A DNA stretch of 64,000 bases, taken from NCBI GenBank assembly GCA_002269645.1, contig NIVC01001814.1, positions 94,751 to 158,750 on the forward strand, read 5' to 3'. This DNA is from Macrostomum lignano (Eukaryota). The notes under the pieces are model-generated. The model was given only the letters and a program-made list of their open reading frames with translations, had not been told where the DNA came from and did not search any database. Positions 3,501 through 64,000 of this stretch are shown here, piece after piece. Position 1 is the stretch's first letter. Every line of letters starts with the position of its first letter. The position numbers and the translations under genes were made by a program.

Positions 3501-3545
3501 CAGGTAATCTTCATCCTTAACTAAAGACTTCATGTAATCTTCATG
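513..3545. repeat. 30/33-nt tandem array (aaagacttcaggtaatctgcatccttccct and an aaattagac variant), roughly 95 units
   Basis: Directly visible. It contains higher-order duplications, e.g. the rare tcagtgtgtaatc variant near 2190 and 2680. Confidence 0.97.
861..3533 (-). CDS. Putative repeat protein (KSLGKDEDYL / KSNLGKDADYL)n, 890 aa
   Basis: ATG at 3533 and a stop-free frame. Unit length variants are 30/33/36 nt (all 3n), and many variants are synonymous (GAT/GAC, GAA/GAG). It terminates only because of a 1-nt deletion near 880. Confidence 0.4.
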   Translation of the reverse strand: MKSLVKDEDYLKSLGKDENCLKSLGKDADYLKSLGKDEDCLKSLGKDEDYLKSLGKDGDCLKSLGKDEDCLKSLGKDEDCLKSLGKDEDYLKSLGKDGDCLKSLGKDEDCLKSLGKDEDCLKSLGKDEDYLKSLGKDEDCLKSLGKDEDYMKSLGKDEDCLKSLGKDEDCLKSLGKDEDCLKSLGKDEDYLKSLGKDEDCLKSLGKDEDYMKSLGKDEDCLKSLGKDADYLKSLGKDADYLKSNFGKDADYLKSFGKDADYLKSNLGKDADYLKSNLGKDADYTLKSNLGKDEDYLKSNLGKDADYLKSNLGKDEDYLKSNLGKDADYLKSFGKDAVYLKSFGKDADYLKSLGKDEDYLKSNLGKDADYLKSNFGKDADYLKSFGKDADYLKSNLGKDADYLKSILGKDADYLKSNLGKDADYLKSNLGKDADYLKSNLGKDADYTLKSNLGKDEDYLKSNLGKDADYLKSNLGKDEDYLKSNLGKDADYLKSFGKDADYLKSFGKDEDCLKSNLGKDADYLKSNFGKDADYLKSFGKDADYLKSNFGKDADYLKSFGKDADYLKSNLGKDADYLKSNLGKDADYLKSFGKDADYLKSFGKDADYLKSFGKDTDYLKSFGKDEDCLKSLGKDEDCLKSLGKDEDYLKSNLGKDADYLKSNFGKDADYLKSFGKDADYLKSFGKDADYLKSNLGKDADYLKSNLGKDADYLKSILGKDADYLKSFGKDADYLKSLGKDEDYLKSNLGKDADYLKSNFGKDADYLKSFGKDADYLKSFGKDADYLKSNLGKDADYLKSFGKDADYLKSILGKDADYLKSFGKDADYLKSILGKDADYLKSILGKDADYLKSNLGKDADYLKSNLGKDADYLKSNLGKDADYLKSNLGRMKIT

Positions 3546-29001: not shown

Positions 29002-29139
29002 GTGTCCATGGAGATGTCGCTTTGCTTTATCTTAACTGTACCTGGCGTACCTGGCAAGTGTTGTGGCCGATTAGTCAGTCAGTGTCTGATTTCTGCGCAC
29101 CCATCGATTTTTATACTGGCTATGCACAGCTTCAGGAAT

Positions 29140-29530
29140 GTACGTCTTCAAGTGTACATCGATAATGTTTATCTTCATTAGTTCGAAGGCCATGTACTCG
29201 TACGTCTTCAAGTGTACACCGGCTATGTACATCTTTGATTGTACATCTTCAAGTGTACATCTTCAAGTGTACATCTTCAAGTGTACATCTTCAAGTGTAC
29301 ATCTTCAAGTGTACATCTTCAAGTATACATCTTCAAGTATACATCTTCAAGTGTACATCTTCAAGTGTACATCTTCAAGTGTACATCTTCAAGTGTACAT
29401 CTTCATGTGTACATCTTCAAGTGTATACCGGCAATGTACCTCTTCAAGTGTACACCCAACAATGTAACTCTTCAAGTGTACATCCAACAATGTACATCTT
29501 TAAGTGTACACCGACAATGTACATCTTCAG
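29140..29530. repeat. 14-nt tandem array (tcttcaagtgtaca)
   Basis: Directly visible, downstream of the ephrin stop. Confidence 0.9.
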
Positions 29531-36873: not shown

Positions 36874-39747
<2,874 letters not shown>

Positions 39748-48900: not shown

Positions 48901-51402
48901 GGGTAGGGAGTGGCTACAAAACTGAGGGGTGTTGGAAAGAGGGGGTAGGGAGTGGCTACAAAACTGAGGGGTCTTGAAAAGAGGGGGTAGGGACTTGCTA
49001 CAAAACTGAGGGGTCTTGAAAAGAGGGGGTAGGGACTTGCTACAAAACTGAGGGGTCTTGAAAAGAGGGGGTAGGAAGTGGCTGTAAAACTGAGGGCTGT
49101 TGGAAAGAGGGGGTAGGGAGTGGCTACAAAACTGAGGGGTCTTGAAAAGAGGGGGCAGGGAGTGGCCGTAAAACGGAGGGTGTTGGATAGCGGGGCAGGG
49201 AGTGGCCGTAAAACGGAGGGTGTTGGATAGCGGGGCAGGGAGTGGATGGCTTGGGAGCATACAGAAGACATTACCATTCCATCGATTGCAGAAAGTTGTG
49301 GAAGTCCACATCAGTGCTTGTTCTGGTATTCGGGATCTACTACCTGATCTTCCTACCCGTGGCTATGATCCCGAAAGACCGTCTCGGAGCGAAACTGGAG
49401 TTTGTCCGACTCTACTACGAGCACTTTTTCAGCTCATTTCAGGTAGCTACTGAATCGAAACCTATTCAGTGAAGCTGAATAGCATTAAGGAAAGCAAATA
49501 ATTCTTAGAAATCTTGATAATCCATTCTTAACAACCCAGGGCTTCCTGGTAGCCCTGCTCTACTGCTTCGTGAATGCTGAGGTGCACCGGGAGCTGCGCG
49601 AGACTCTTCTGGCAACCCGTCTGGGCGCCTGGCTTTGCCGGCGCGGCGCTATCGGCGCTGCGAAGGCGCCGGAGGCTCGACGCTGCAGCGCCGAATGCCG
49701 GAGAACGAAGCGGATGCGCCTGATGCAGGATCAGCTGCAGCTGCCCGGACACGAGGATGTGAGCAGCGGTTTTTAATTGATCTGCACTTGTAGAAATCCT
49801 TTTAATATTTAATATTTTTCCTTGGAAACTATTTTAATAAATGATGCAGGGCTTGATTACATAATCATGCTGATGCTGTGTCAATGGTCTACGACACTTA
49901 CCTGCCGCAAACTGAATAGTATTGCAATTGATGCAATTCGTTTTCCAAGAAACGAAGTTTCCCATTCCTCCTACTCAAGTCGTCCTGGCTGGAATAAATA
50001 TCTGGACACGGAATGTGATGATAACCGCGTAGCTACCTGCGGCACGGGATAAAGGATATTGCCTGGGAATTTAGGGACATGAGCTGCTTAAAGAGAGGCG
50101 GAGAAAGGCAGGGCGCAGGATGTCTTTTAATCAGGCAACTGAACGCTAAACACGAACACTGATTCGAAGCCAGAGTATCCTGATTGGAGTCCTATTAATA
50201 AATACTCAGGTCTGCTAGGGTTGAGAAGGTTGAATTAAATTATTCGTCAACATCTGTTAGGCGTCCTTGCCATTTTTTAATTAAAATATTATCGAGTCAA
50301 AATCTGATCTTGAAGTATGCTTTGTTAAAAACCTGATCCTCAGCCTCCAGCAGGGGGTGGGGTGAGCAGTCGCAATCAAAATATCGTTTAAAAAATTGAT
50401 AAAAGATTTTTTCAGGAAATTCGAGATGGCTCGTAGCTGGGTGAGGTCTACGAATCGCATGGTCATATATTTAGACATCTCCAGCAATCTGTTCTGAAAT
50501 GGCAATGCTAAATGACCCTGTTTAGGAGTTTCTGCGCTCTTATGGGGCCAGCTTCTACGTCATCTCGATCTTTGATGAGTCTAACTTGAAGCCGGCATAA
50601 TAATCAAAACAAAGGAGCGCCTAAAGTTCTGGGCGCGCCTGTACTTTTAAACCAGAAGGCAGTTGAGTGCCTGCAGCGTCAGCAGCAGCACCTCCGGTAA
50701 AGACTGTTGAGCCGACTGGGCACGGATGAAGTCGTCGATGCAGCATCGAAGCGTCTCGCTTTGACGGGCCAATCAACCTTGGCAGACAAACTGCTAACAC
50801 GGTCTGGCAGCCTGCATGACAACTTAAATGTGGCGCTTGCTAATTATTATTTTTCGGTTTCGGCGACATCGTCCCACAGCCAGCGCATTCCGCTGACTCC
50901 TGAGCACATGCAAGCGCACCAATACTGTACGCAGACACGCACTCATACACACGCTCACACAGGGTGTACAGCGGCCCTGACTTTCTATTCGTCAGGCATG
51001 TACAGTCTTTGTGCCTTGGGGGCTGGCCTTATGGCTGTGAATTGCCAAGTTTCGCGGCCTGAGAGTCAGACGCCTTTACCGCAGAGCTCCTCTGACCCCG
51101 ACTGCGGACCTTAACCGAAGCACTACCCTACCAGCCCTAGCCTAAATTGTCAGCATTAAAATGCATTGGATGCGGTGCGGATGTACGGCCTCACAGGCCG
51201 TGTGAGTCTGTGTGAGTGCGTGCTCAAGGTCTGCTAATAAACCAAAATTGTTGCACAAAACTGAAACCCGCAGCTCTTCTTCATCGAACAGAAGCGTCAG
51301 AAGCAGCTGCAGACAGATGAAGCTGCAGACCTCAGCTACACAAATGAATCCATTGAGGAGGCCGGCTGTCTAGTCGTTCCGCTGGCTGATTCGGACGACT
51401 GA
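39912..51402 (+). CDS. Class B1 (secretin/PTH-receptor-like) GPCR with two tandem hormone-receptor ectodomains, ~649 aa
   Basis: Exons are 39912-39974 (signal peptide MNFRAAIHCVIYLVAVSGAVS), 42842-43222 (ECD1), 44381-44800 (ECD2), 45061-45155 (TM1), 45338-45443 (RRLHCQRNAIHVNLF, TM2), 47479-47638 (TM3 CR..WVFVEALHLH..LGWG), 48054-48187, 48647-48738, 49292-49442 (KLWKSTSVLVLVFGIYY..FFSSFQ), 49540-49758 (GFLVALLYCFVNAEV) and a tentative last exon 51274-51402. All introns are GT-AG and in phase. Confidence 0.9.
40312..40965. repeat. 18-nt pyrimidine-rich array (cactcccttgcccctcct) in GPCR intron 1
   Basis: Directly visible. A related 17-nt array lies at 43300-43625. Confidence 0.95.
40985..41125 (-). 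mobile_element. Degenerate LTR-retrotransposon gag remnant
   Basis: Minus strand with one 1-nt shift reads RRKKDGETAVQFL-AALRNLA, then RLLVEKKLTLEAAKNIALA. Both resemble conserved Ty3/Gypsy-type gag motifs (Q..GE...F...LR.LA; RLL.E..LTL..A...A). Confidence 0.5.
41860..42715. repeat. 20-nt tandem array (aatcgaatctcaccctcatc)
   Basis: Directly visible. It ends ~125 nt before GPCR exon 2. Confidence 0.95.
42842..43222 (+). CDS. GPCR exon 2: first, divergent hormone-receptor domain
   Basis: Six Cys: AACQ, DCPGSFDGLLCWPP, AACP, RRC and LTEC. Acceptor is ttcag, donor is gtgaga, phase 0-0. Confidence 0.85.
43300..43625. repeat. 17-nt tandem array (ctcactccctgccccac)
   Basis: Directly visible. Confidence 0.93.
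44105..44365. repeat. 21-nt tandem array (ctccaaatccgccttctaaaa) abutting the GPCR exon 3 acceptor
   Basis: Directly visible. Confidence 0.92.
44381..44800 (+). CDS. GPCR exon 3: second, canonical hormone-receptor domain
   Basis: Six Cys: LICR, RCPPEFDVAVCWP, PCPDY, LCTDRGVW and WTNFSEC. Acceptor is ctgcag, donor is gtgagc, phase 0-0. Confidence 0.9.
44872..45005. repeat. 22-nt tandem array (gagtgacacatagagcagatgt)
   Basis: Directly visible. Confidence 0.88.
45503..45983. repeat. 10-nt tandem array (acttacagcc), ~48 units
   Basis: Directly visible. Confidence 0.96.
46012..46190 (+). mobile_element. tRNA-derived SINE-like element, diverged copy
   Basis: ggagcgccaaagtccggggttcgattc head (a similar head is at 36730-36762), followed by aagtcagg..ctgtacaccc..gtgctcagg, which matches the other copies. 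Confidence 0.45.
46490..47368. repeat. 35/31-nt tandem array (tgtctatggcagcgggcggagaatatggagagtgc)
   Basis: Directly visible. Confidence 0.96.
48265..48490 (-). mobile_element. tRNA-derived SINE-like element
   Basis: The reverse complement has a tRNA-like head (ggtgaagacgtctgacttctcg..ccttggttcgattcc). The body matches 50888-51025. Confidence 0.55.
48825..49245. repeat. 42-nt G-rich tandem array in GPCR intron 8
   Basis: Directly visible. It ends ~45 nt before exon 9. Confidence 0.93.
50888..51100 (-). mobile_element. tRNA-derived SINE-like element
   Basis: Shares ctcctgagcacat.caagcgc.ccaatactgtacgcag with 48270-48320. The reverse complement has the head gcggtaaaggcgtctgactctc. Confidence 0.55.
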
Positions 51403-52692
51403 GCATCTCGATAACAGCGTGTTTTTTGCTTACAGCTGTAGACTTTATGCCTTCTCGGGCCCTGGGGAACGGATTCCCCTATCTATTTGATGCAACCGTT
51501 GAGCTGTAGGTGACTTTAATTGTTTTTTGCACCGATTTCCCTTTGATTAGCAGGTGGCTTCTATTTTCTGCAGAACAAAAACACACCCAGACGTACGTGG
51601 AAAAGTTTCATCATCTCAATCAGCAATACGATAAATATATTTATGCGTCTCAGCAGGGTGTGAAACTCATTTACAGCAGTGATTCTGTCTCTTATACGCC
51701 AAAAAATTACTTAGAGTTTAGAGCGGAGCTTTTATCTTTCACAAGCAATATGATTTTCCTTCCTAGCATTGGGGAGTTGGTCCCAGGAGAAGCTCTCGCA
51801 CGGGCAGAGCCAATTTCAAAAGAGCAGTCATCTTGCTGTGAGCAAACGATTGAACGTCGGCGTGAAGCAGCTGACTCACCAGGGACTTAAGAAAGAAAAA
51901 CTTGTTTCTTTAATCTTGCATGTTACCTATCACGCCATCATAAGGATCTAAGCTAGTTCTTTATTAGTATATAACTACTGAAAGTAGAGATGTTAGTAAA
52001 TTATAATAGCATGCGCAGCAGTGTAATATTGAGAATGCTTAGCATAGCATGACCCAAGTTGGTTGGTGCAAATGCATGTAACAGGGAGATGAGAAATAGA
52101 AAGAGGGTAAGAAGACAGTTTAGCCAAAACCGATGGCTGCACACAGGAGAAGAGAAATGAGAGGCTCGCCAGGTCAGGGGCAGAACAATACGAATCTCGG
52201 CTGGCTGTGCAGGGGGCGCATGAGCCTACAATGCGATTTCAATTCTTAGGCGCCTTCTTCACCAACCGCTTCGAATAGCAACAGAGGACAGGCAAGCTTG
52301 TTGAATAGAAAACGTGCTTGGATGACAGGCAAGCGGGCTAGGGGTAGGGGCCCAGCTGCCACACGTGAGACTGCAGAACACGTGCTGTGCTAGGCTGCAG
52401 CCGCTGCAGAATGCGCGCGCAAACAAAAATTTTACAATGCCGAGCGAGCGCAGAGGGGGGAGACGCTGGCTAGGCTGGGGCTTTTGAACACGCAAGACAA
52501 GAGCGGACTGGAACTCAAAGCAGTGGATAAGCAGAGCCAGCAGCGCTGAGGCTCAGTAAATTTTCCAGCTGAGATCACTTCTAAAAAACTGCATTGGCTC
52601 GGGAGTTATCAGCGTACGCCATCGGACATCCATTTTTAGCCATCGCTGCAGTCGGCGAAGCCTCGGGAAAGGCGGCCCGACGCGGACAAAGG

Positions 52693-54324
52693 ATGCGGCG
52701 GCGGGCAGGGCCGCTGCTTCCGCTGCTGTTGCTTCTGCTGCCGCTGCTGCTGCCGTCGCCGCCACCAGTAGCCGCTGTGGCCACCGCCATCCCCGCCGCC
52801 GGTGCCGACTCCATTCAGCTGGAAGAGGTTCCAGACCTGGACGACGAAGACAGCGAGATTGGCCTAGAGAGACGATCAAAAGAAGAGTTGGCACCGCCTC
52901 CCGAGGGTGGCGACCACAAGGAGCTGCTACGGCAGCTAAAAACCGTGCTGCACAAGGAGCTACAGCGTCGTAAAGCGGTCAGCCAGATCGAGAAGAAGGG
53001 TGCGCATCTTTCTGACGTTGTCAGCGGAGCCTCAAAGGTGGGCAAAGCTGTCTCTAAAGAGGACAAGAAGCACAAGAAGAAAAAGAAGAAAAAGAAGCAG
53101 AAAAACTTTTTTGCTACTCTGTGGCAGAAGCTGCGCAAAATATTGCCTCTGTGGGCCATCATTTTAATATTTTCCGGTATCGGTCTCATTTTTCTGCTGC
53201 TGCTAGCGCTGCTCATCTACTGCTGCTGTTGCCGCAGCAAGTCCAGCCGAAGCCGGATGCAGCCGCCCGCCCAGTCAGTGCTGTACAAAGACCTGGACCT
53301 GACCGGCGCGAACCGGCCCCAGTTCGGCATGATCAACTACTCGCTGGAGTACGATCTAAAGAAGGACAACCTCATAGTGACCGTATCCAACTGTCAGGAT
53401 CTGCCAAAAGGCCTGGACAGCTTAGACCCGTACGTGGTGGTGAGCATGATGAGCGAGAAGGACGAGGCTGCTGGCAAGACGCGCGGCACAAAGCCAAAAA
53501 CGTCGAAAACTGTGCGCAACAGCGGGAACCCGGTATTCAACTTCTCCTGCGTCTTCCCAGTAAAGAAGAAGTCAGAGCTCAAGGAGAAGATTGTCGTGTT
53601 CGAGGTATTCGATTGGGACTACGGAATCAAGCACGACATGGTGGCACGCAAAGTTGTCCACCTACGTCGCCTGGGCGAAGGTCTGGACGAGATTCTCGGG
53701 CGGACAGCCGACTTCTCGAAGGCGCTGCGCCGCGGCTTGCCACGCGACGAACGCGGGCCAGGCGACATCTGCCTGTCGCTGTACTACGCCGCCAAGAACA
53801 TGTCGCTCACCGTGAGCATCATCGAATGCAAGGGCGTCTTCGTCGCCAAGGGTCGCTCCGAGGAGCCGGACCTCGAGACCCTACCAAACACCTTTGTGCG
53901 CCTGAGCCTGCGGCATCCGCAGCTGAAACGCGAACAGGTGAAACGATCCAAGCAGGTCTCGGGCACCAGGAATCCCTACTTCAACCAGCAGTTCGTGTTC
54001 GAAGTTGGCGCTCGCGACATGCTGGAGACGTGCATCCTGCGCATCACTCTGGTGCACAAGACCGAGACCCTGCGGCTCAAGCGGCCCGTCGGCTCTCTGA
54101 AGCTGCACGCAGGCGCCGACCCCGACAGCCTGCCGCTGCTGCACTGGCGCGAGCTGCTGCAGACGCCGAACCGGGCGGTGGCCCGCTGGCACAATCTGAT
54201 CACACCCGAGGCCGAGGAGAGAAACCGCAAGATCAGGGAGAAGGAGGAGAAGCGCCGGCTGCAGGAGCTGCAGGAGGAGGCGGAGGCGGCGGCCGAGACC
54301 GCGGCGCCCTCGGGAAATCGATGA
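52693..54324 (+). CDS. Intronless synaptotagmin-like protein (signal peptide, luminal domain, TM, Cys cluster, C2A, C2B), 543 aa
   Basis: The first ATG is at 52693 (the track start at 52594 is a TTG). KQKNFF..KILPLWAIILI..IYCCCC resembles the Syt1 juxtamembrane/TM region. C2A has DPYV, NPVFN and VFDWDYGIKHD. C2B has GDICLSLYY, NPYFNQQFVFEV and HWRELL..RWHNL. AATAAA lies at ~54513. Confidence 0.88.
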   Translation: MRRRAGPLLPLLLLLLPLLLPSPPPVAAVATAIPAAGADSIQLEEVPDLDDEDSEIGLERRSKEELAPPPEGGDHKELLRQLKTVLHKELQRRKAVSQIEKKGAHLSDVVSGASKVGKAVSKEDKKHKKKKKKKKQKNFFATLWQKLRKILPLWAIILIFSGIGLIFLLLLALLIYCCCCRSKSSRSRMQPPAQSVLYKDLDLTGANRPQFGMINYSLEYDLKKDNLIVTVSNCQDLPKGLDSLDPYVVVSMMSEKDEAAGKTRGTKPKTSKTVRNSGNPVFNFSCVFPVKKKSELKEKIVVFEVFDWDYGIKHDMVARKVVHLRRLGEGLDEILGRTADFSKALRRGLPRDERGPGDICLSLYYAAKNMSLTVSIIECKGVFVAKGRSEEPDLETLPNTFVRLSLRHPQLKREQVKRSKQVSGTRNPYFNQQFVFEVGARDMLETCILRITLVHKTETLRLKRPVGSLKLHAGADPDSLPLLHWRELLQTPNRAVARWHNLITPEAEERNRKIREKEEKRRLQELQEEAEAAAETAAPSGNR

Positions 54325-55211
54325 TGATTTTATTTTAAATCGATAATAATTTTAGTCAACAGAAATTCGAAATTATATGCCGTTCCAGTACTGATCCGAC
54401 CGCTGTTGAGTATTTTGGATAAAGAAATCTGAATTTGGGGAACAAATTGCTTGCTCTATGCACTGTGTTTATTTTCTATCATACAGTACGCCTACATATA
54501 TGAAATGCATAAAAATAAACGTGCTTATGCTTTTAAACAACTACTATCAATTCTATAGCTGAATTCACTGTGGACTCTAAACTCTTGGAAGTAGCAGAGC
54601 TGTTACGAATGAACTGGAAACCAAAACACGTCCGAGCAGTGTTGGTGAAACAGAATTTTAATAAGTAGTCCTTTATTTTTTAGGGTTTATTGATTTTCGC
54701 ACAGTATTTTTGCTGCATCCTTGTCTTAGCTGCTTTTGTCAACAATGACCCTGCCTTGTCATTGGCAGGTGCATGGGCAGGGTTAAGTTGCGGGTATGTA
54801 AAAATTAATCAGTCGGGGGCACAGAGACTAAACTGGTTGAGGACTAAAGACTGTCTGGAGATGTTTTTGAGCTGATTTCGGAAAAATATGCTGCTTTAGG
54901 GAGTGAAGCTTCGGCTGGGAGTCTCCCAGCCGCCGGAGTCTGGTAGGCTGTCGTTGCTTAGAAAATTGATGAAGTCAGCGAGACGAGAAGTCAGCTCACG
55001 AGTTTGGGAAGCCTTCTCTGGAATGCGTCAGGATTAACTGTTTTTTTAAATATCCACTTCGATAATTATTTATATTGCACACTTCGGTAGTCTGCTCACG
55101 CGAGAAAACAGGCACCAAACCCCAATAGACCAGGGAGGAGGGCAGGGGGAGCCTTGCTCGCTGATTAGGCGCCCCCTGTTAATCATTTCACCTATTCCCC
55201 AGCAACTAATT

Positions 55212-55745
55212 TGGTGCTGGCGCCCCTTGGTGCTGGCGCCCCTTGGTGCTGGCGCCCCTTGGTGCTGGCGCCCCTTGGTGCTGGCGCCCCTTGGTGCTGG
55301 CGCCCCTTGGTGCTGGCGCCCCTTGGTGCTGGCGCCCCTTGGTGCTGGCGCCCCTTGGTGCTAAAGCCCCTTGGTGCTGGCGCTCCTTGGTGCTGGCGCC
55401 CCTTGGTGCTAAAGCCCCTTGGTGCTAAAGCCCCTTGGTGCTAAAGCCCCTTGGTGCTAAAGCCCCTTGGTGCTAAAGCCCCTTGGTGCTAAAGCCCCTT
55501 GGTGCTAAAGCCCCTTGGTGCTAAAGCCCCTTGGTGCTAAAGCCCCTTGGTGCTAAAGCCCCTTGGTGCTAAAGCCCCTTGGTGCTAAAGCCCCTTGGTG
55601 CTAAAGCCCCTTGGTGCTAAAGCCCCTTGGTGCTAAAGCCCCTTGGTGCTAAAGCCCCTTGGTGCTAAAGCCCCTTGGTGCTAAAGCCCCTTGGTGCTAA
55701 AGCCCCTTGGTGCTAAAGCCCCTTGGTGCTAAAGCCCCTTGGTGC
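55212..55745. repeat. 16-nt tandem array with two sub-blocks (ggtgctggcgcccctt then ggtgctaaagcccctt)
   Basis: Directly visible. Confidence 0.96.
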
Positions 55746-56048
55746 TCCCAAGATGGCGCCCCCTAGATGGCGCGCCTGCCATGATACTTTTGAGAGGTGG
55801 CGGCTCTTGGTACTGGCGCAAGACCCGGCCCTCAATTATAAAACCTGGCTACGCCCCTGCAATGGACCCCTCAGTCTCAATTTCTGATGATTTAATTGAT
55901 TGATCCCCTCTACTTTGCTGGCATGATGTCTCTCTAATGCTCCGCATTTTGCCTCACTAATTTTTTGAAAATCATACTAATTGGAGATTGTTCTAAGGAA
56001 AACTTCAGGCTTCTTGCCTCCTCTTGCCAAACTGGGTCGCATTGTAAC

Positions 56049-58302
56049 TCACTCGGCCTTGACAGCCAGCGAAGCGCCAGTGGCAAACTGGTGCATCCGG
56101 AGGCGGCGTCGCATCTCCGCCGGGTTGTGCAGCGCCTTCGTTAGCGGTGACGCTGCAGCGGCACTGCGCCGAAGGGGTCGTCGCCGACGTCGCCGTTGCT
56201 GGCAAGGCGCCGATGCAGCCGCTTCTATCGGCGCCAGATCGATAGCCAGGGCGCGCATGTCTGCTCGAGTGAGACCGCGCGGCCCCGGCACCACAGGCGG
56301 CGCTGTGCCGCACATCCGACGCTGATGTGCCGCGTAATTTGACGCGCAGTTGGCCAGCTCAGTCTGACCGGCCATGGCATTGATGAGGCGCCGATAGTTG
56401 GCGTCTGGTCCGTCCGAGTAGGCGGCAACTTCTCGGAGCTGACGCAGCAGCCGGCATCGGTCAGGTCTATTGTCAGAGTCGGCCAGAGCATCAACGAGGT
56501 CGAGGAGGCCTCCGCTGCCGCTTTTGCAGTCGCCTTTTGTGCAGGCAAGTTTCAAGAGACGGCGCAGCCGGCAAAGCTGCGGGCTGGACAGGCGCTCGGC
56601 TGGACACAGCGCGGGACAGCCAGTGCAGCGCACAGCCAGCGCCACAGCCCGGTCGCGCATAGTAACCAGCTCCGTCAGGCTGCTCAGCACCCACTCGAGG
56701 TCGTGGGCAACCGGCGGCGCGCGGCCTCCGCAGCCAGTCCGATAAAACTCGCGGCAGAGATCGCGCAAGTAAGCTGCCACACGCAACGCTTTGGCGTATC
56801 GGAGAGAGCCGCGACGGTAGGCCGCAACGCTAGCCGCCAGGGTGGTAACCCGACGACTGTCGCTGCTGGTATTGTTGGGCGCTGGAGTTTGCAGCGTTGC
56901 GTCCGGGTCTGCGGCTGGGACAGCCGCCGGTACAGTTCGCTGGCAGCAGTTGTTGTTGTTAGTGCCGCTAGACTGGGCGGCTGTCGGCTGCCAGGTGCGC
57001 AGCGTCCACTGGTCCTGCGAAGCTTCCATGTCGGTGATGTTATCCCGAACGTTGCGATGCTGGTGCAGCTGCGAATTGTGCTTTGGCTGCTCCTGCGAGT
57101 CAGCGTTGTTTGCATCATCGAGCCTGCGTTATTTGATCAGTTCGTTGCGCTACGTTAGGTTTGAGTTGATTTGATTTAATCTGGTTTACGTATAAATCCT
57201 CCCTAGATAAAAATAAGCACTCGAGAATTGTTCAGGACATACGCAAATACGATTAATATTCTTAAAGTACTACTTAACACGTCTTTACGAGATAAAGACT
57301 AAAGTGCAAGTACGCAAGTTATGACTCACCCCAGGCTGTTTGGCAGTCGTTTTGGGAAGCTGATGCCACCGCTAGCTCCGCTGGCGCCGAAGCTCAGCAT
57401 GCTGCAGCTGTTGTGTCGGTTGCCACTGTAATCATTATCGGCGTTTTCGTCGTAGCCTTCGCCGGAGAGCTCGCCCTCGCCCTCGCTACTCTTCTTAATG
57501 GACGTAACGATACCGCCGCACCTGCCGCAGGTGCCCGACTGCTGCCGTCGATTAGGTTGTCGACCTCGACGCCCGGCTGTTTTTTCTGCTTTCCCTGCCG
57601 CCCTCTGTCTCTGCCATTGTCCACCGCGGCCATCTCGCCGAGCCGGTCCATGACCACATCCAGCATGTAACGGTCCACTGTGTCTTCACAGCGTGCACCG
57701 ATGTGCTGCGCCCGCCACAGGGCGCGACTCTCGTTTTCCAGCTTGCGCCGCATCGGCGTCTGCAGCGCATTCGCCTGCTGAGCTGATGTCTTTGCTTGAT
57801 CTGGCCGCCTCCGCGGGCGCCGGCTGGTCCGGTTGGCCCGGATGCTGTCCACCAGATCGGTCAGGAACCTGTCGGCTTCGGCTAATCGCCGCTGGTTCCT
57901 CGGAGCCAAGCTGAGCCCCAGCATCATGTTGTTCAGGGAGAACTCCAGCTTATCAAGCGACTTCTGGCACTTTGCCAATCGTTCAACTTGATCCTCGCTG
58001 CACTGGCTACCCTCGCCGCCTGAAAAACCAGCTGGTCCTTCGGAACTGTCATGGTCGATCTCCGTATTGTTCCAGCTTAAATCATGGTACTGAAGCTTCT
58101 TCTCCTGCTGCTTCTGCTGCTGTTGGTACTTCTGCTGATGCAGGCCAGCATCAGGCGACATCGACAGGGGCCGTGTCTGCTGCTGCATCGGCGGCTCCGG
58201 CGGATGCAGCGGTGACCAATCGTCTGGACTGACGGTGGCGAGCGAAGCGCCGCGACTTCGCTGGCGGAACAGCATCCGCCTGAGCGGCCGCTTGCTCGGC
58301 AT
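56049..58302 (-). CDS. Uncharacterised protein, at least 2 exons (58302 to 57330; 57123 to 56049), with a frame discontinuity near 57540-57600
   Basis: Two long GC-rich ORFs (323 aa and 326 aa). The GT-AG intron 57124-57329 (ctggg|gtgag ... taacgcag|g) joins ..RLPNSL-G-LDDANN.. in phase 2. No family recognised. Confidence 0.6.
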
Positions 58303-59224
58303 CTCTGCTGCTGGCGTTACCAAATCTTCCTGCCGTCTCTCAAGTAGCGAGAGCGAGTTGACCAAATGCCTTATAGTTAACCAAAAATTTGTTCATGCCT
58401 TAGTTCGCGCATATAAATTTCCCTATCTGCCTTTCCCAGAAGACGCAAGTACCATAGACACTCGAGATGAATAATGAATAATTTATCAAAAACCTGCTAC
58501 TTGATTGAACAAATTTAACCGTAAAAACAGCGCATCAGCTTTGCATTTTTTCTGCGTTTGCTTTTTCGTCCCGGTGGTGTTTACAAGCAGAAGAGACTAG
58601 CTAATACGAGTACATGCGTACGAGTGGGTAACTTTCCTAAGCCTGTATATCCGTTTAGTTGATGGATGCAACCACAATTTTGGTTAGCCAACTGCAAATA
58701 TTTAAGTAAATCCAACACAGCTGTAAGACTAATTCTTCTATTCGCTAATCCAATGAACGGAAAGAATATGAAATATGAATAATACCTTTATACCAGAACA
58801 AATACGGAAAGTCTTGCCGCAGTCTAGGACTACTTTGGGCATGAAATTTCACCGAAACTCAAGTTTATTCCAGAGTTCCCAAAAATTCGATCATTTTGAC
58901 AGAAAACTCAAATTTTGAGAATAATTTCATTTGAAATCGGATCATCCGCACACCTGGCGCATTCGCGCCTGTCCCTGAAGTTGCCTGGGAAAGGCTGCCC
59001 AGCTTTGTGTAAATGCCCGTCGACAACTGGCACTTAAGAAGTGTTAATGCGGATGCGATTAGTGGAAATAATCCTTTGAAAGCGCAGTGCTTGGGCAGCA
59101 AAGTATTTGCGTCAAAGTAGCTGGACCGTCAGAAAACCTATAAATTAATCGATATTTTAGTCGAATATCTCCCTAGCTGACTGTTGTAGCAACAAACTGG
59201 TTACCATATTCAGACAACTAAAGC

Positions 59225-61114
59225 ATGCGCTACAGCCTAGCTCTGAGCGCCGCTGTTCTGGCGACACTGTCGCTTGCGGTTGGCGCTGCAATCAACTTAG
59301 CCGAGTGCTTTGCCAAGGACCGGGACGCCTGCATCAACTGCGTAGTGCAGTTTAGCAACGAGAGGTACGACGAATTCTGCAAGGCCTCGCCAACCAGCAG
59401 CATGTGCGGCAACGATGCTGGAAAAACCAACTACGTCAGCAACATTCAGAGATCCGCAAGTAACGGCTGCCCAGCTGCAGCAGCGATAGAGAAGGCAGCA
59501 CAAGCAGCAGAAACTACAACCGAAGCTCCGACAACTACCGAATCTCCAACAACTACGACCCAAGCTCTGACAACTACGACCCAAGCTGCGACAACTACGA
59601 CCCAAGCTGCGATAACTACGACCCAAGCTGCGATAACTACGACCGAAGCTCCAACAACTACAACCAAAGCTCCAACAACTACAACCGAAGCTCCAACAAC
59701 TACAACCAAAGCTCCGACAACTACAACCGAAGCTCCAACAACTACAACCCAAGCTCCAACAACTACAACCAAAGCTCCGACAACTACAACCAAAGCTCCA
59801 ACAACTACAACCGAAGCTCCAACAACTACAACCGAAGCTCCGACAACTACAACCAAAGCTCCAACAACTACAACCGAAGCTCCGACAACTACAACCAAAG
59901 CTCCAACAACTACAACCAAAGCCCTGACAACTACAACCGAAGCTCCGACAACTACAACCAAAGCTCCAACAACTACAACCGAAGCTCCGACAACTACAAC
60001 CAAAGCTCCAACAACTACAACCGAAGCTCCGACAACTACAACCAAAGCTCCAACAACTACAACCAAAGCCCTGACAACTACAACCGAAGCTCCGACAACT
60101 ACAACCGAAGCTCCAACAACTACAACCGAAGCTCCGACAACTACAACCAAAGCTCCAACAACTACAACCGAAGCTCCAACAACTACAACCGAAGCTTCGA
60201 CAACTACAACCAAAGCTCCGACAACTACAACCAAAGCTCCAAAAACTACAACCGAAGCTCCAACAACTACAACAAAAGCCCTGACAACTACAACCGAAGC
60301 TCCGACAACTACAACCGAAGCTCCGACAACTACAACCGAAGCTCCAACAACTACAATCGAAGCTCCAACAACTACAACCAAAGCTCCAACAACTACAACC
60401 GAAGCTCCGACAACTAAAACCGAAGCTCCGACAACTACAACCAAAGCTCCAACAACTACAACCAAAGCTCCAACAACTACAACCAAAGCTACGACAACTA
60501 CAACCGAAGCTCCCACAACTACTACTGAAGCGACGACAACAAAGCGTCCAGGACATTGTCGTGGACATGGTCATGGACATTGCCATGGACACGGTCATGG
60601 TCACGGTCATGGAAACGGTCACGGTCATGGACACGGTCATGGTCATGGACATGGTCATGGTCATGGACACGGTCACAGTCATGGCGATGATAATGACGAA
60701 GATGACAAGGACAAAGGAGGCAAGGGTAAAGGAGACAAAGGCAAGGGAAGTAAGGGCAAAGCAGGCAAGGACAGAGATGATAAGAACAGGGGTAAAAGAA
60801 GAGGATACGACAGAAGTTGGGTTGATGATGACAGTGACAGAGGCGACTGGCAAAAGCGTAGAGGCGGCTGGAGAAAGCGTAGAGGCGGCTGGAGAAAGCG
60901 TAGAGGCGGCTGGCAAAAGCGTAGAGGCGGCTGGCAAAAGCGTAGAGGCGGCTGGCAAAAGCGTAGAGGCGGCTGGAAAAGCGTAGAGGCGGCTGGAGAA
61001 AGCGTAGAGGTGGCTGGCAAAAGCGTAGAGGCGGCTGGAGAAAGCTTAGAGGCAGCTGGAGAAAGCGTAGCGGCAGGGGAGGCCGGTGAGGTTAAAGCTG
61101 AAATCAAGAATTGA
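59225..61114 (+). CDS. Secreted multi-block mucin-like protein: signal peptide, 6-Cys domain, TTTT[E/K]AP repeats, (GH)n, D/K/G-rich linker, GGW[RQ]KRR repeats
   Basis: Single 629-aa ORF with signal peptide MRYSLALSAAVLATLSLAVGA. Synonymous third-position variation occurs within the repeats (cca/ccg, cat/cac, ggt/gga). Confidence 0.85.
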   Translation: MRYSLALSAAVLATLSLAVGAAINLAECFAKDRDACINCVVQFSNERYDEFCKASPTSSMCGNDAGKTNYVSNIQRSASNGCPAAAAIEKAAQAAETTTEAPTTTESPTTTTQALTTTTQAATTTTQAAITTTQAAITTTEAPTTTTKAPTTTTEAPTTTTKAPTTTTEAPTTTTQAPTTTTKAPTTTTKAPTTTTEAPTTTTEAPTTTTKAPTTTTEAPTTTTKAPTTTTKALTTTTEAPTTTTKAPTTTTEAPTTTTKAPTTTTEAPTTTTKAPTTTTKALTTTTEAPTTTTEAPTTTTEAPTTTTKAPTTTTEAPTTTTEASTTTTKAPTTTTKAPKTTTEAPTTTTKALTTTTEAPTTTTEAPTTTTEAPTTTIEAPTTTTKAPTTTTEAPTTKTEAPTTTTKAPTTTTKAPTTTTKATTTTTEAPTTTTEATTTKRPGHCRGHGHGHCHGHGHGHGHGNGHGHGHGHGHGHGHGHGHGHSHGDDNDEDDKDKGGKGKGDKGKGSKGKAGKDRDDKNRGKRRGYDRSWVDDDSDRGDWQKRRGGWRKRRGGWRKRRGGWQKRRGGWQKRRGGWQKRRGGWKSVEAAGESVEVAGKSVEAAGESLEAAGESVAAGEAGEVKAEIKN

Positions 61115-62033
61115 CAGCTGATGCACTCACTCAATCAATGAGGTTGAGAAATTTTGCTATTGACAGGACATAACTTGGTGGTGGTAAATGCTTTATCTTG
61201 ATTGAGAACTAGAACAGTAGCAAAATCGAACTTTAAAATAGACGGTTTAAAATAATCGGCTGAACGGAATAATCTACTCCGTTGATTTTGCTATAGCTTT
61301 CAAACACTTTCTATTTTTACATTAGTGTATAACTATAAGTTTACTCAATAAGATTAGCATACAGATCCGTTAATATCTGCTCATTGGTTGGGTCAATGAG
61401 GAGGCAGTAAACGAACAATGATACACTAATGCAACTATGGGCATATAAGGGTAAAAGCAAGAGATAAGTTGTAAAACCTCGTAGAATCAGCCACAAACAA
61501 GGACCGTCGAAGTTTAAAGTCGCATTAGACAGATGGCAGCGAAGTTAGCTCTTAGTACACTATGCTTTTAGTACACTTGCAGGGTTACAGGTACGCTAGA
61601 CAGGGGCAAAAGCAAATGAAGTGCAACACAACATCCAGTCTACACATATCATGCTGCTGAACTTTCGCTGTACGAATATTAGACAAAATGGATTTCAAAC
61701 AGCATTGCACAAGCACATCAAAGAGGAACCACAAGAGCTGGGCAAGCTCTACTGCTTCCATGCTTCCATGCGTCTCCATTAAGCAGAGCCGTAATGATGA
61801 TCAGACAAAATACACGAAAGACTAGTTCCATCATGATCATGCATTATATATGGCTTCTAAAATTCTGAATAGATACGCTCGTAGCATATCTATAAATAGC
61901 AAGCTTGGAAAATCCTACAATCAATCACGGTAAAGAAAAAATGGAAAAAAGTTGGAAAGGTTATAGAAAAGTGCCGACAGCCATGCAACTAGATCTTAGG
62001 GTGGAATCTTGCCCTTGTTGGCCGCTTTGCATG

Positions 62034-62825
62034 CTAGCAGCATTTGCCACCGCCGGCGCCTGAAGCTCCGTCTACGTCATCCTCGCCAACAATGATGCCG
62101 GCGTTTCGGCCAGAGGAACGTCGACCAGCTGACGTTGCGCCCTCAGACCTTGACGTGGACGACCTAGACGAGGAGCCTGGGTTGGACGCCTCCTCGGCGT
62201 CGCGACGAGCCAGCATGTCGGCTGTCAGGCGAGCGAACGCCTCTTCTACGCCGCGGTTCAGCTTAGCGGATGTGCCGCAGTGCTTGGCGCCGACCGAGCT
62301 GGCGAATTCCTCGGCATTCGCTAGCGGTACATGACGATCGCGTTCGAGGTCAATCTGTAGGGAGACAGTTTTACCAAATAGCAATACGAACTGCAAACTG
62401 CTACCAAACAAAGACCGGTACAAATTATCTATCGTGGGGATAATATGCCCTCCCCGCAGTGTTCGCACCTTATTGCCAACTAGGTACAGTGTGACATCGT
62501 TGCCGCGAATCTTGCGCAGCTCCTTGACCCAGTTGCGCGCCTTCTCGAACGAATCCTCGTCAGTGATGTCGTAAACTAGAATAGCGCCGTCACTATCCCG
62601 ATAGTAGATTGGACCGAGGGCGTGAAAGCGCTCCTGCCCGGCCGTGTCCCAGATGTTCAGCGTCACCCGTCGGCCGGAGACGTTAAGTTTCTTAGAAAGG
62701 AACGAGGCCTGCACTGTGGTTAAGTGTTTGTCATTGAACTTATCCTCGACGTAGCGCAGCGCCAAAGAAGTTTTGCCGACACAGCCCTCGCCCAAGAGGA
62801 CAATTTTAAATTCTCTGTTGGACAT
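62034..62825 (-). CDS. RAB21: Rab21 small GTPase, 225 aa, 2 exons (62825-62469; 62354-62034)
   Basis: Rab21-typical motifs FKIVLLGEGCVGKTSL, HLTTVQASF, WDTAGQERFHALGPIYYRDS, GNK|ID, TSAK and C-terminal KCC. The 114-nt GT-AG intron is 62355-62468. Confidence 0.93.
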   Translation of the reverse strand: MSNREFKIVLLGEGCVGKTSLALRYVEDKFNDKHLTTVQASFLSKKLNVSGRRVTLNIWDTAGQERFHALGPIYYRDSDGAILVYDITDEDSFEKARNWVKELRKIRGNDVTLYLVGNKVRTLRGGHIIPTIDNLYRSLFGSSLQFVLLFGKTVSLQIDLERDRHVPLANAEEFASSVGAKHCGTSAKLNRGVEEAFARLTADMLARRDAEEASNPGSSSRSSTSRSEGATSAGRRSSGRNAGIIVGEDDVDGASGAGGGKCC

Positions 62826-64000
62826 TACTGCAACAGTTTTTTCAATCAAATTAGCAAATAACTGTGCTTTTTAGCCGGGTAAAAAATAATTAGAGAAAGC
62901 GAAAAGATAAAAACATACAAGGGGGGCCGAGATTTGAGGTGGTGGCGTGAGGAGGTCCGCTCTGTATTCTAATTATTAAGCTTGTGCGCGGTGCGCACAG
63001 AGCTTGGTCTTCTCGTCCCCAACTCCCTGCACCAGCTCTGGTTGGTGTGTCTGTATTTCTGCACACAAATTTTAGCGTCAGGCTTCAAGGCCTCGAACAC
63101 AAGCCCTCCTCCCGCTCCAGTGCCAGCCCCGCCACTTCTACTAGGACCTGCGACCCGTTTTCAGATAAGCAAACCGGCCGCCCCTTTCTCTCCGCAAATC
63201 AATGTACATTGGTTCTAATTTAAATTTCTAGTGTACATTGGATCAAATGTACACTCGTCGCGACTCGTACACACTGAACGAACGCACGGATCTCTTTTTC
63301 CCTTCACACAGTTTTACAAGCGTACGCTCGTATAAGGCTAGATTACGACTTTACGAGACGCGCGGCAATGAGTAAATGAATTTGTAATACCTTCAACACA
63401 TACGCATCGTACCATGTAATATTTAACGGATCGAATGACAGCGTTATAAAATTGTTCCAATTATTGTTCCAATTGTTCCAATTGTTCCAATGCAAGCCAG
63501 AAAGTAAAAAGGGGATTATTCACTAAGGAAACAAAAAACAATTCAGACTAAAGATTTTTTCGAGTTTATTTTGCTTGACACAGACTGGTTATAAAAAACG
63601 TTCGACAACAATGCACTTTATATTTTTATGGAGACAATTTTCAGCTTTTTAAACCGAGCTGTACTGATTGTTAGCGTTGTAAACAGCGAGCTGTTTTGCA
63701 CTGATAAGATAGCGGACGTCATACATAGCGATTACGGTGCGTATTTTTGAGTCTGGATTTACCAGAGAAAAACAACAAAAAAGTTGCTGCAATTAGCGCG
63801 AAATACGAGTAAATACGAGTATTAAAACAATCAGCGTCAATAGTACATGCACTTCTTGTACATGAAGTATGGTACTAATGTTATATAGTTAACGAACTCG
63901 CCAACCAACTGACAAGCATGCAACCAGCAGTGTTGTTCATCCATTTAAGACTGCAGTAGGTCTTTGCTAAGTTCTCCATTTACTGTTTAAGAATGATACA

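What the first reader, a model, noticed from the sequence alone, without database searches (positions are those of the whole stretch)
59225..61114. Secreted block-copolymer protein: mucin stalk, Gly-His metal-binding tract and cationic Trp/Arg repeats
Sequence: signal peptide, 6-Cys globule, ~45-50 TTTT[E/K]AP-type units with mixed charge, ~20 His in a (GH)n tract with 2 Cys, a D-rich then K/G-rich linker, and (GGW[R/Q]KRR)n. Established: Gly/His-rich proteins harden via Zn/Cu (polychaete jaw, mussel byssus). Arg/Trp-rich sequences drive cation-pi coacervation and membrane-active antimicrobial activity, and KR/RR are convertase sites. Inference: an undescribed biomaterial or defence protein (mucus, adhesive, rhabdite, eggshell or stylet), or a precursor releasing short GGW peptides.
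Basis: partly seen in the sequence, partly recalled or inferred. Interest (0 to 1): 0.72.

Follow-up and report, generated by a model that had tools for sequence, protein, structure and literature searches.

The report
Orphan flatworm mucin with sticky cationic tail
This is a real, intronless gene of the marine flatworm Macrostomum lignano for a secreted mucin-like protein with a histidine-rich and a strongly positive tryptophan/arginine tail; it has no relatives anywhere, its job is untested, and it is most likely a mucus or glue component.

Summary
Window 59225-61114 (+) is a 629-codon ORF with six blocks:
- a signal-peptide-like start;
- a 6-Cys domain;
- 49 TTTT[E/K/Q]AP heptads;
- a (GH)n tract with 20 His and 2 Cys;
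- an acidic then K/G-rich linker;
- GGW[R/Q]KRR repeats.

The organism is Macrostomum lignano. The last 45 residues of the window's ORF come from a frameshift. The GenBank Mlig_3_7 contig NIVC01004709.1 is identical over 2.3 kb except for 22 nt in the GGW array. There the ORF is intact: 628 aa, 12 GGW-type units, ending ...RGGR*.

GenBank's annotation is built from transcripts. It has two partial "hypothetical protein" models in this frame, one starting at the same ATG and one ending at the same stop. The locus is therefore very probably transcribed, but the full-length architecture is not described.

The N-domain has no sequence homologue among 1.84 billion representative proteins, no significant Pfam match and no PDB fold match.

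Best reading (inference): an O-glycosylated brush anchored or cross-linked through a cationic tail that responds to pH and metals, in mucus or glue. Rivals are an antimicrobial mucin, a peptide precursor, a reproductive secretion, and a non-functional ORF grown from minisatellites. Tissue and function remain untested. Interest is moderate.

The parts
59139..59144 (+). TATAAA box-like motif, 86 nt upstream of the ATG
   Evidence: sequence. It is a motif match only; no transcription start data were available.
59225..59290 (+). Start codon and signal-peptide-like segment (aa 1-22, MRYSLALSAAVLATLSLAVGAA)
   Evidence: basic R2, a hydrophobic core with Kyte-Doolittle 9-mer means of 1.5-2.4, and small residues at -3/-1 (VGA|A). 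A rule-based reading; SignalP was not available.
59291..59509 (+). Non-repetitive 6-Cys N-terminal domain (aa 23-95)
   Evidence: codon log-odds +14.9 bits in this frame only; single-sequence AlphaFold2: four helices, mean pLDDT 83; no sequence or fold relatives.
59510..60541 (+). Mucin-type Pro/Thr-rich (PTS) array: 49 x 21 nt, TTTT[E/K/Q]AP heptads, net charge about -5
   Evidence: 0% indels, diverged edge units, 7-unit higher-order blocks marked by KAL units 20 and 27 (a third KAL unit, 37, lies 10 units further on).
60542..60685 (+). Gly-His tract (KRPGHCRGH(GH)n; 20 His, 2 Cys)
   Evidence: variation almost all synonymous; charge +18 at pH 5.5 against +2 at pH 8.1.
60686..60838 (+). Acidic patch (DDNDEDDKD) followed by K/G-rich mixed-charge linker
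60839..60976 (+). GGW[R/Q]KRR array, the part in frame with the ATG (first unit RGDWQKR)
   Evidence: charge about +19.
60977..60978 (+). Site where the window lacks 22 nt relative to GenBank NIVC01004709.1 (one repeat unit plus 1 nt), causing the frameshift
   Evidence: window 59000-61300 is otherwise base-for-base identical to L001.
60979..61089 (+). Rest of the GGW array in the +2 frame (KRRGGWRKRRGGWQKRRGGWRKLRGSWRKRSGRGGR) and the TGA that ends the intact allele
60977..61114 (+). Tail as assembled in the window (KSVEAAGESVE...AEIKN*): a frameshift reading of the same repeat DNA

Best explanation
This is an intronless, lineage-restricted gene of Macrostomum lignano. It encodes a secreted protein of about 63 kDa before glycosylation, built as a block copolymer.

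Shown:
- The ORF, its blocks and its frame are as described.
- An intact 628-aa allele exists in the public assembly.
- Transcript-derived gene models cover both ends of the ORF.
- No homologues were found.

Inferred, in order along the protein:
1. The N-terminal signal peptide takes the protein into the secretory pathway.
2. A small disulfide-bonded helical cap follows.
3. The 49 TTTT[E/K]AP heptads receive dense mucin-type O-glycans and form an extended, hydrated, nearly charge-neutral bottle-brush.
4. The C-terminal ~190 residues are the reactive end. The 12 GGW[R/Q]KRR units carry about +37 charge. They would bind polyanions and negatively charged surfaces such as glycocalyx, sulfated or acidic glycans, substrate films and microbial envelopes, through electrostatics and Trp/Arg cation-pi contacts.
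5. The (GH)20 tract acts as a pH switch. It is polycationic in an acidic secretory granule and neutral in seawater at pH ~8. In the neutral state it can coordinate Zn/Cu/Ni and cross-link.
6. The acidic patch may fold back on the cationic blocks during storage.

Net function proposed: an end-anchored or cross-linking mucin of a secreted mucus or glue layer (epidermal or rhabdite mucus, or a gland secretion). It would work like lubricin plus the KR-rich cohesive regions of Mlig-ap1.
For: Real coding gene:
- The frame is open from end to end only in this reading.
- Codon log-odds and GC3 of the unique N-domain favour this frame.
- Variation in the GH tract is synonymous-biased.
- The intact 628-aa ORF in GCA_002269645.1 is identical outside a 22-nt indel.
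- GenBank has a model that starts at the same ATG (252 aa) and another that ends at the same stop (227 aa). Their lengths differ from the ORF by exactly 1 and 5 heptads.
- That annotation was built only from RNA-seq and de novo transcripts with TransDecoder (PMC5730564).

Secreted mucin:
- Signal-peptide features, and 56% Thr plus 11% Pro in 344 aa.
- M. lignano makes Gal-beta(1-3)-GalNAc O-glycans on a secreted adhesive protein (PMC6410801).

Sticky end:
- Block charges were computed.
- In the same species, the positively charged K/R repeats of Mlig-ap1 are proposed to mediate cohesion. Heparin blocks attachment (PMC6410801).
- His-rich secretory proteins stored protonated at acidic pH, then cured by His-Zn coordination at seawater pH, are documented in mussel glue (PMC13022425).
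Against: - There is no expression pattern, proteomic hit or glycosylation datum for this protein.
- The gene identifier appears in none of the papers or supplements searched.
- No canonical AATAAA or ATTAAA lies within 800 nt downstream of the stop.
- The function rests on composition alone, and low-complexity blocks can arise by minisatellite expansion without adaptive value. This window is 36% minisatellites.
- The multiple KRR/RKRR sites could mean the tail is cut off or cut up rather than used intact.
- The window's own copy is frameshifted.
Confidence: 0.45

Rival explanations
1. It is a defence mucin or antimicrobial polyprotein. The mucin part holds the protein in surface or gut mucus. 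The Gly/His tract and the Trp/Arg-rich repeats kill or trap microbes, either intact or after convertase cleavage at the KRR/RKRR sites into short cationic peptides.
For: - The corrected sequence has 27 dibasic positions and four R-x-[KR]-R sites.
- The GGW array carries about +37 charge with one Trp per 7 residues.
- My own knowledge: Gly/His-rich secreted antifungals (shepherins, holotricin-3, tenecin-3), Trp/Arg-rich antimicrobial peptides (indolicidin, tritrpticin, lactoferricin) and antimicrobial peptides from the His-Gly-Lys-rich domain 5 of high-molecular-weight kininogen. That domain also binds LPS (PMC5584120, listed).
Against: - After dibasic cleavage and carboxypeptidase trimming the released units would be only GGW or GGWQ, too short and uncharged to act on membranes. 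Activity would need the uncleaved array.
- There is no amphipathic pattern.
- No immune-induction data exist.
- The reading is not exclusive of the structural one.
Confidence: 0.2
2. It is a reproductive or egg-attachment secretion, from prostate gland seminal fluid or the cement/shell glands. It would be one of the fast-evolving, repeat-rich orphan proteins typical of such glands. The cationic tail would bind sperm, antrum or egg surfaces.
For: - Many prostate-limited M. lignano transcripts encode proteins predicted to be secreted, with no identifiable homologues or domains (PMC5977470).
- The complete lack of homologues fits rapidly evolving reproductive genes.
Against: - None of the motifs occurs in the supplementary files of the prostate screen that are held as text.
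- There are no positional expression data.
- Orphan status is equally typical of other gland products, such as Mlig-ap1 and Mlig-ap2.
Confidence: 0.15
3. It is a non-functional or barely functional ORF. A small secreted Cys-domain gene was invaded by expanding minisatellites, or is a decaying copy. It is transcribed but has no selected role for the repeat blocks.
For: - The window is 36% minisatellite arrays with long ORFs in several frames.
- The PTS array is highly homogenised, with 89% matches and 7-unit higher-order blocks.
- The window's copy carries a frameshifting 22-nt indel.
- No homologues exist.
- The syn/non-syn contrast in the PTS array is only modest: 0.40 against 0.30 for the next frame.
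Against: - Four different arrays all keep one frame behind a bona fide signal peptide and domain.
- Variation in the GH tract is strongly synonymous-biased.
- The public assembly has the intact frame.
- Transcript-derived CDS models exist.
Confidence: 0.12
4. It is a neuropeptide or hormone precursor releasing about 12 copies of a GGW[R/Q] peptide.
For: A repeated short unit is flanked by dibasic or tribasic sites.
Against: - There is no Gly after Trp to donate an amide.
- A 344-aa mucin array and a GH tract are not features of known neuropeptide precursors (my own knowledge).
- The products would be 3-4 residues long.
Confidence: 0.03

Closest known systems
Lubricin / PRG4 (vertebrate boundary lubricant). 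The comparison rests on my own knowledge.
   Same: Both are secreted proteins with a central mucin domain of short Thr/Pro/Ala repeats carrying both Lys and Glu (PRG4: KEPAPTT-type; here TTTT[E/K]AP). Non-mucin end domains anchor the glycosylated brush to surfaces.
   Different: There is no sequence homology. PRG4 ends are folded somatomedin-B and hemopexin domains. Here the ends are an orphan 6-Cys helical domain and a disordered His-rich, cationic tail. No Pfam domains were found.
Mlig-ap1, the cohesive protein of the M. lignano adhesive organs (PMC6410801)
   Same: Same organism, secreted, and no homologues outside flatworms. It has extremely cationic Lys/Arg repeat regions proposed to act electrostatically with anionic glycans. 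The adhesive system also carries mucin-type O-glycans.
   Different: Mlig-ap1 is over 5,000 aa and has C-type lectin, VWD/C8/TIL and EGF domains. None of these is present here. Its repeat motif is different and has no Trp. This protein is about 10 times smaller and has a PTS array and a GH tract.
His-rich metal-coordinating structural proteins: mussel mefp-12 and preCol His-rich domains, the Nereis jaw protein Nvjp-1, squid beak His-rich proteins (PMC13022425, and my own knowledge)
   Same: Gly/His-rich secreted sequences. The His pKa gives a switch from the acidic granule to seawater, and His-Zn/Cu coordination cures or hardens the material.
   Different: Here the tract is only 48 aa, a pure (GH)n, within a mucin. 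There is no coiled coil, no Tyr/DOPA and no homology. Metal binding was not tested.
Domain 5 of high-molecular-weight kininogen, and histidine-rich glycoprotein (my own knowledge; PMC5584120 listed)
   Same: GH repeats lie next to Lys/Gly-rich stretches. These bind Zn, heparin, LPS and anionic surfaces, and peptides derived from them are antimicrobial.
   Different: Those are vertebrate plasma proteins with cystatin domains. The resemblance is in composition only; no similarity was detected.
Trp/Arg-rich antimicrobial peptides (indolicidin, tritrpticin, lactoferricin) and Gly/His-rich antifungals (shepherins, holotricin-3). My own knowledge.
   Same: Cationic Trp/Arg and Gly/His composition in secreted proteins. 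Some are made as multi-copy precursors.
   Different: Those are small peptides or precursors. Here the motifs are tandem blocks on a 600-aa mucin. The unit GGW[R/Q]KRR has a much lower Trp density and would be destroyed by dibasic processing.

Membership tests
Mucin-domain (PTS) secreted glycoproteins, a broad functional kind | N-terminal signal peptide | tested here: met
   Rule-based only: n-region Arg, a 16-residue hydrophobic core, VGA|A at -3/-1. SignalP was not available.
Mucin-domain (PTS) secreted glycoproteins, a broad functional kind | Long tandem-repeat region dominated by Thr/Ser/Pro | tested here: met
   49 heptads; Thr 193 of 344 and Pro 39 of 344 residues.
Mucin-domain (PTS) secreted glycoproteins, a broad functional kind | Dense O-GalNAc glycosylation of the repeats | not testable with these tools
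   The only support is that the species makes Gal-beta(1-3)-GalNAc on Mlig-ap2 (PMC6410801).
Gel-forming mucins (MUC2/MUC5 type) | VWD-C8-TIL assemblies and a C-terminal cystine knot for polymerisation | tested here: not met
   The Pfam scan of the whole protein found no family. The N-domain scanned alone gave one sub-threshold hit, DUF6971, at 14.8 bits against a cut-off of 27.
Mlig-ap1 / Mlig-ap2 flatworm adhesive proteins | Sequence similarity, or the shared domain set (C-type lectin, VWD, EGF, TSP1, LDLR) | tested here: not met
   No Pfam domains. The searches with the N-domain and the C-terminal blocks returned no M. lignano protein.
Mlig-ap1 / Mlig-ap2 flatworm adhesive proteins | Expression in adhesive gland cells and presence in footprints | not testable with these tools
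   No expression or proteomic data could be reached.
His-rich metal-cross-linked biomaterial proteins (Nvjp-1, mefp-12, preCol His-rich domains) | High His content in a secreted protein | tested here: met
   20 His in 48 aa, but only 3% of the whole protein.
His-rich metal-cross-linked biomaterial proteins (Nvjp-1, mefp-12, preCol His-rich domains) | Demonstrated Zn/Cu binding and location in a hardened or cured material; homology to a member | tested here: inconclusive
   No homology was found. Metal binding and location cannot be tested here.
Multi-copy neuropeptide or antimicrobial peptide precursors | Repeated peptide units flanked by dibasic convertase sites | tested here: met
   KRR or RKRR follows every GGW unit; there are 27 dibasic positions in the corrected sequence.
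Multi-copy neuropeptide or antimicrobial peptide precursors | Released units of functional length, a C-terminal Gly amide donor, and a small precursor without structural domains | tested here: not met
   The units would be GGW or GGWQ after trimming. No Gly precedes the basic site. The precursor carries a 344-aa PTS array.

The most novel reading that the evidence does not exclude
One small polypeptide carries everything needed for a self-packaging, self-curing secretion. It has a glycosylated brush, an acidic patch and polycationic Trp/Arg blocks that could form an internal complex coacervate for granule storage. It also has a (GH)20 switch that loses its charge and gains metal-coordination ability when it meets seawater. 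If so, this would be a minimal natural design for pH- and metal-triggered underwater mucus or glue, for example the rhabdite matrix or a still-unidentified component of flatworm adhesion.
Probability: 0.12. Interest if true: 0.75.

Novelty: new variant of a known kind. Interest (0 to 1): 0.42.

Why it matters
M. lignano is the best-developed animal model for temporary bioadhesion. It has transgenesis and RNAi by soaking, so a 628-aa intronless gene with four chemically distinct blocks is unusually easy to test. Each block (PTS brush, (GH)n, K/G, GGWxKRR) corresponds to a motif that materials scientists already study separately. Finding them joined in one natural protein gives a ready-made test of how charge patterning, His-metal switching and cation-pi stickiness work together.

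There is also a practical annotation point. Repeat-rich secreted genes like this one are split or frameshifted in current assemblies. GenBank holds it as two fragments, and the window's copy is frameshifted. Such proteins are therefore under-counted in secretome surveys.

If it turns out to be an ordinary mucus component, it is a modest addition to the list of flatworm orphan secreted proteins.

Tried and rejected
- Exact-protein look-ups of the window ORF and of a neighbouring ORF found nothing on record.
- The word-index homology search with the N-domain gave no hits.
- The exhaustive phmmer search of the mature N-domain against 1.84 billion representatives gave one hit, P0003, at E = 3e-4. 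It is a triplicated MADS-like repeat protein whose score is inflated by three stretches, so I rejected it as spurious.
- The search with the C-terminal blocks gave five weak low-complexity hits (E from 4e-6 to 8.5e-4) with no BLASTP alignment. I rejected these too.
- Pfam gave no significant match. DUF6971 scored 14.8 bits against a cut-off of 27.
- The PDB sequence search was not significant, E = 0.72. Foldseek of the AlphaFold2 model against PDB gave a best E of 5.5.
- Rfam and tRNA scans of the window found nothing.
- tblastn found no paralogue of the N-domain or the C-terminal blocks elsewhere in the window.
- Literature: no paper contains TTTTKAP, GGWQKRR or the related strings in a relevant context. 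GHGHGHGH occurs only in unrelated contexts. "Macrostomum lignano" with "histidine-rich" gave two unrelated papers.
- The gene identifier stem Mlig021003 is absent from all full texts and from the supplements of three M. lignano papers. The motifs are absent from the supplements of the prostate screen.
- I considered and rejected an intron that would bypass the frameshift. The comparison with the GenBank contig shows a simple 22-nt indel.
- The synonymous/non-synonymous comparison of PTS units across the three frames favours the ORF frame only mildly (0.40, 0.30 and 0.06). It is confounded by higher-order repeat homogenisation, so I gave it little weight.
Full report
**What is there**

Window 59225-61114 (+) is a 629-codon ORF. 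An in-frame TAA sits two codons upstream of the ATG, and a TATAAA lies 86 nt upstream. The protein has these blocks:

| Residues | Window coordinates | Content |
|---|---|---|
| 1-22 | 59225-59290 | Signal-peptide-like: MRY, a 16-residue hydrophobic core, VGA/A |
| 23-95 | 59291-59509 | Non-repetitive domain with six Cys |
| 96-439 | 59510-60541 | 49 heptads of 21 nt, mostly TTTEAPT (19) and TTTKAPT (14); 56% Thr, 11% Pro, net charge about -5 |
| 440-487 | 60542-60685 | KRPGHCRGH(GH)n, with 20 His and 2 Cys |
| 488-538 | 60686-60838 | Acidic DDNDEDDKD patch, then a K/G-rich mixed-charge stretch |
| from 539 | from 60839 | GGW[R/Q]KRR units of 21 nt |

TRF reports the arrays with periods of 21, 6/18, 15 and 21 nt and no indels.

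**The C-terminus is a frameshift product**

The seventh GGW unit reads GGCTGG-AAAAGCGT. Four more GGW-type units then follow in another frame and end at a TGA at 61087-61089.

I fetched the neighbour gene's GenBank contig, which gave locus L001. This is GCA_002269645.1, contig NIVC01004709.1, from the Mlig_3_7 assembly of M. lignano DV1. Window 59000-61300 is base-for-base identical to it, except that the window lacks 22 nt after position 60977. That is one repeat unit plus one base.

In the GenBank contig the ORF is intact. It is 628 aa, has 12 GGW-type units, and ends ...GGWRKLRGSWRKRSGRGGR*. The window's tail KSVEAAGES...AEIKN is therefore the same repeat DNA read out of frame. Whether the indel is an assembly error or an allele cannot be decided here.

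**Organism and context**

The C2-domain ORF at 52693-54321 is 100% identical to Macrostomum lignano BOX15_Mlig021003g3. The neighbouring genes are ordinary:
- a class-B GPCR hormone-receptor-domain exon;
- the C2 protein;
- two domain-less ORFs on the minus strand;
- a Rab-type GTPase.

The gene sits alone, on the + strand, in the 58.4-62.0 kb gap.

**Is it more than chance?**

A long ORF alone is weak evidence in this window. Outside the finding, about 22.9 kb of the 64 kb is minisatellite or microsatellite arrays. These give long ORFs in several frames. Only 8 of those 25 arrays have periods divisible by three, which is the chance expectation.

Against that background, six observations support a real gene:
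- Only one frame is open from end to end.
- In the unique N-domain, a codon log-odds score trained on neighbouring genes gives +14.9 bits in this frame and negative values in the other five. Its GC3 of 0.65 matches the neighbours.
- In the GH tract, 17 of the 22 nucleotide departures from (GGT CAT)n fall on third codon positions. That is 15 synonymous against 5 non-synonymous codons. This pattern is expected if the peptide is under selection, though higher-order duplication makes the events non-independent.
- All four arrays keep the frame.
- A second assembly has the intact ORF.
- GenBank calls two CDS models inside it: 252 aa starting at the same ATG and 227 aa ending at the same stop. The second starts in frame with the first ATG. 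Their lengths fall short of the continuous ORF by exactly 7 and 35 residues, that is, by whole repeat units.

The GenBank annotation of NIVC01 was produced only from RNA-seq and de novo transcripts (StringTie, TACO, TBONE, TransDecoder), without ab initio prediction (PMC5730564). These models are therefore indirect evidence that the locus is transcribed. The split is what repeat-induced assembly breaks would give.

The repeat-unit synonymous/non-synonymous comparison in the PTS array favours the ORF frame only mildly.

**Relatives**

No relatives were found by any of these searches:
- Pfam: no significant match.
- Word-index search with the N-domain: nothing.
- Exhaustive phmmer against 1.84 billion representatives: one spurious repeat hit.
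- Search with the C-terminal blocks: only weak low-complexity hits.
- PDB by sequence: nothing significant.
- Paralogues within the window: none.

Single-sequence AlphaFold2 gives the N-domain a four-helix fold at mean pLDDT 83. Foldseek finds no PDB match for it.

The two GenBank fragments were not returned by the homology searches. I cannot explain this. They may be filtered from the index as low-complexity.

The literature library holds no paper with these motifs in a relevant context. It also holds none describing a histidine-rich Macrostomum protein. The gene identifier stem appears in no text or supplement searched.

**How it most likely works (inference)**

The signal peptide and the PTS array place this among secreted, O-glycosylated mucin-domain proteins. 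M. lignano is known to put Gal-beta(1-3)-GalNAc on the secreted adhesive protein Mlig-ap2 (PMC6410801).

The brush is nearly neutral, with E and K units alternating. The chemistry is concentrated in the last ~190 residues:
- The GH tract carries +18 at pH 5.5 but +2 at pH 8.1.
- The acidic patch carries -6 to -7.
- The K/G stretch carries +5.
- The GGW array carries about +37 in the intact allele.

In the same animal, the K/R-rich regions of Mlig-ap1 are proposed to provide cohesion electrostatically. Heparin blocks attachment. In mussel glue, His-rich proteins are stored protonated in acidic vesicles. They solidify by His-Zn coordination as pH rises to that of seawater (PMC13022425).

I therefore propose an end-anchored or cross-linking mucin. 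The cationic Trp/Arg tail sticks to polyanions or anionic surfaces. The GH tract switches from a charged storage state to a metal-coordinating state on secretion. Confidence in this mechanism is about 0.45. Confidence that this is a genuine gene for a secreted mucin-like protein is about 0.85.

**Rivals**

- **Antimicrobial mucin or polyprotein (0.2).** The composition fits, but dibasic processing would leave only GGW or GGWQ.
- **Reproductive or cement-gland secretion (0.15).** This is a question of location rather than mechanism. Orphan secreted proteins are common among prostate-limited transcripts (PMC5977470), but the motifs are absent from that paper's held supplements.
- **Non-functional minisatellite-expanded ORF (0.12).**
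- **Neuropeptide precursor (0.03).** There is no amidation Gly, and a mucin array is atypical for such precursors.

The stylet forms intracellularly, and this protein has only three Tyr. Both points rest on my own knowledge.

**Comparison and novelty**

It works like lubricin/PRG4, which has a mixed-charge Thr/Pro brush with anchoring ends, combined with Mlig-ap1-type cationic cohesion and mussel-type His switching. It is a member of none of these families. The defining domains (VWD/C8/CK, EGF, lectin, SMB/hemopexin, cystatin) were looked for and are absent.

I class it as a new variant of a known kind. It is a lineage-restricted mucin-domain protein with a block combination not described before. 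It is present in GenBank only as two uncharacterised fragments. Interest is moderate (0.42). It is easy to test in a tractable model and attractive for biomaterials work, but orphan low-complexity secreted proteins are common in invertebrate glands, and nothing yet shows function.

Noticed in passing
window 1-56000 (arrays listed): About 36% of the window outside the finding is tandem arrays: 25 arrays with periods of 4-42 nt (8 of the 25 divisible by 3). Many give long ORFs in several frames, for example 861-3533(-) and 25571-29165(+). Repeat-derived ORFs in this genome need independent evidence before being called genes.
   Followed up: partly
window 36874-39747: A 2.9-kb nearly perfect (ACTA)n microsatellite: 718 copies, 98% matches, GC 29%.
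   Followed up: no
window 52693-54321 (+): The C2-domain ORF is 543 aa from its first ATG. It has a Leu-rich N-terminus, a poly-Lys stretch and a hydrophobic, Cys-rich segment before two C2 domains, which looks synaptotagmin-like. The GenBank model BOX15_Mlig021003g3 covers only the last 331 aa and so looks 5'-truncated.
   Followed up: partly
window 44874-50836 against L001 1159-7735: The window and GenBank contig NIVC01004709.1 are 99.15% identical with 70 gaps over 51052-64000, the span that includes the gene. Upstream, in the minisatellite-rich stretch, they are only 92-95% identical with many gaps. Array lengths differ between the two assemblies.
   Followed up: no
window 60839-60847: The first GGW-type unit reads RGDWQKR, creating a single RGD tripeptide (DSDRGDWQ) at the start of the cationic array. 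It may be chance.
   Followed up: no
window 40246-41082 (-): Another low-complexity ORF (278 aa) has an acidic EEGQG-repeat stretch followed by about 30 GKGVRR units on an 18-nt array. It is cationic-repeat coding potential like the finding's tail (tblastn E = 0.02). It starts at TTG, I did not examine it for a signal peptide, and there is no evidence that it is a gene.
   Followed up: no
window 44500-44760 (+): A hormone-receptor domain (HRM, PF02793, E = 5.6e-15) of a secretin-class GPCR lies in the ORF 44042-44854, directly downstream of a 21-nt minisatellite that the ORF reads through.
   Followed up: no
L001 15928-16704 and 17026-17814: The two GenBank CDS fragments of this gene were not returned by the large protein searches, although a neighbour from the same contig was. 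Low-complexity products may be missing from the search index.
   Followed up: partly
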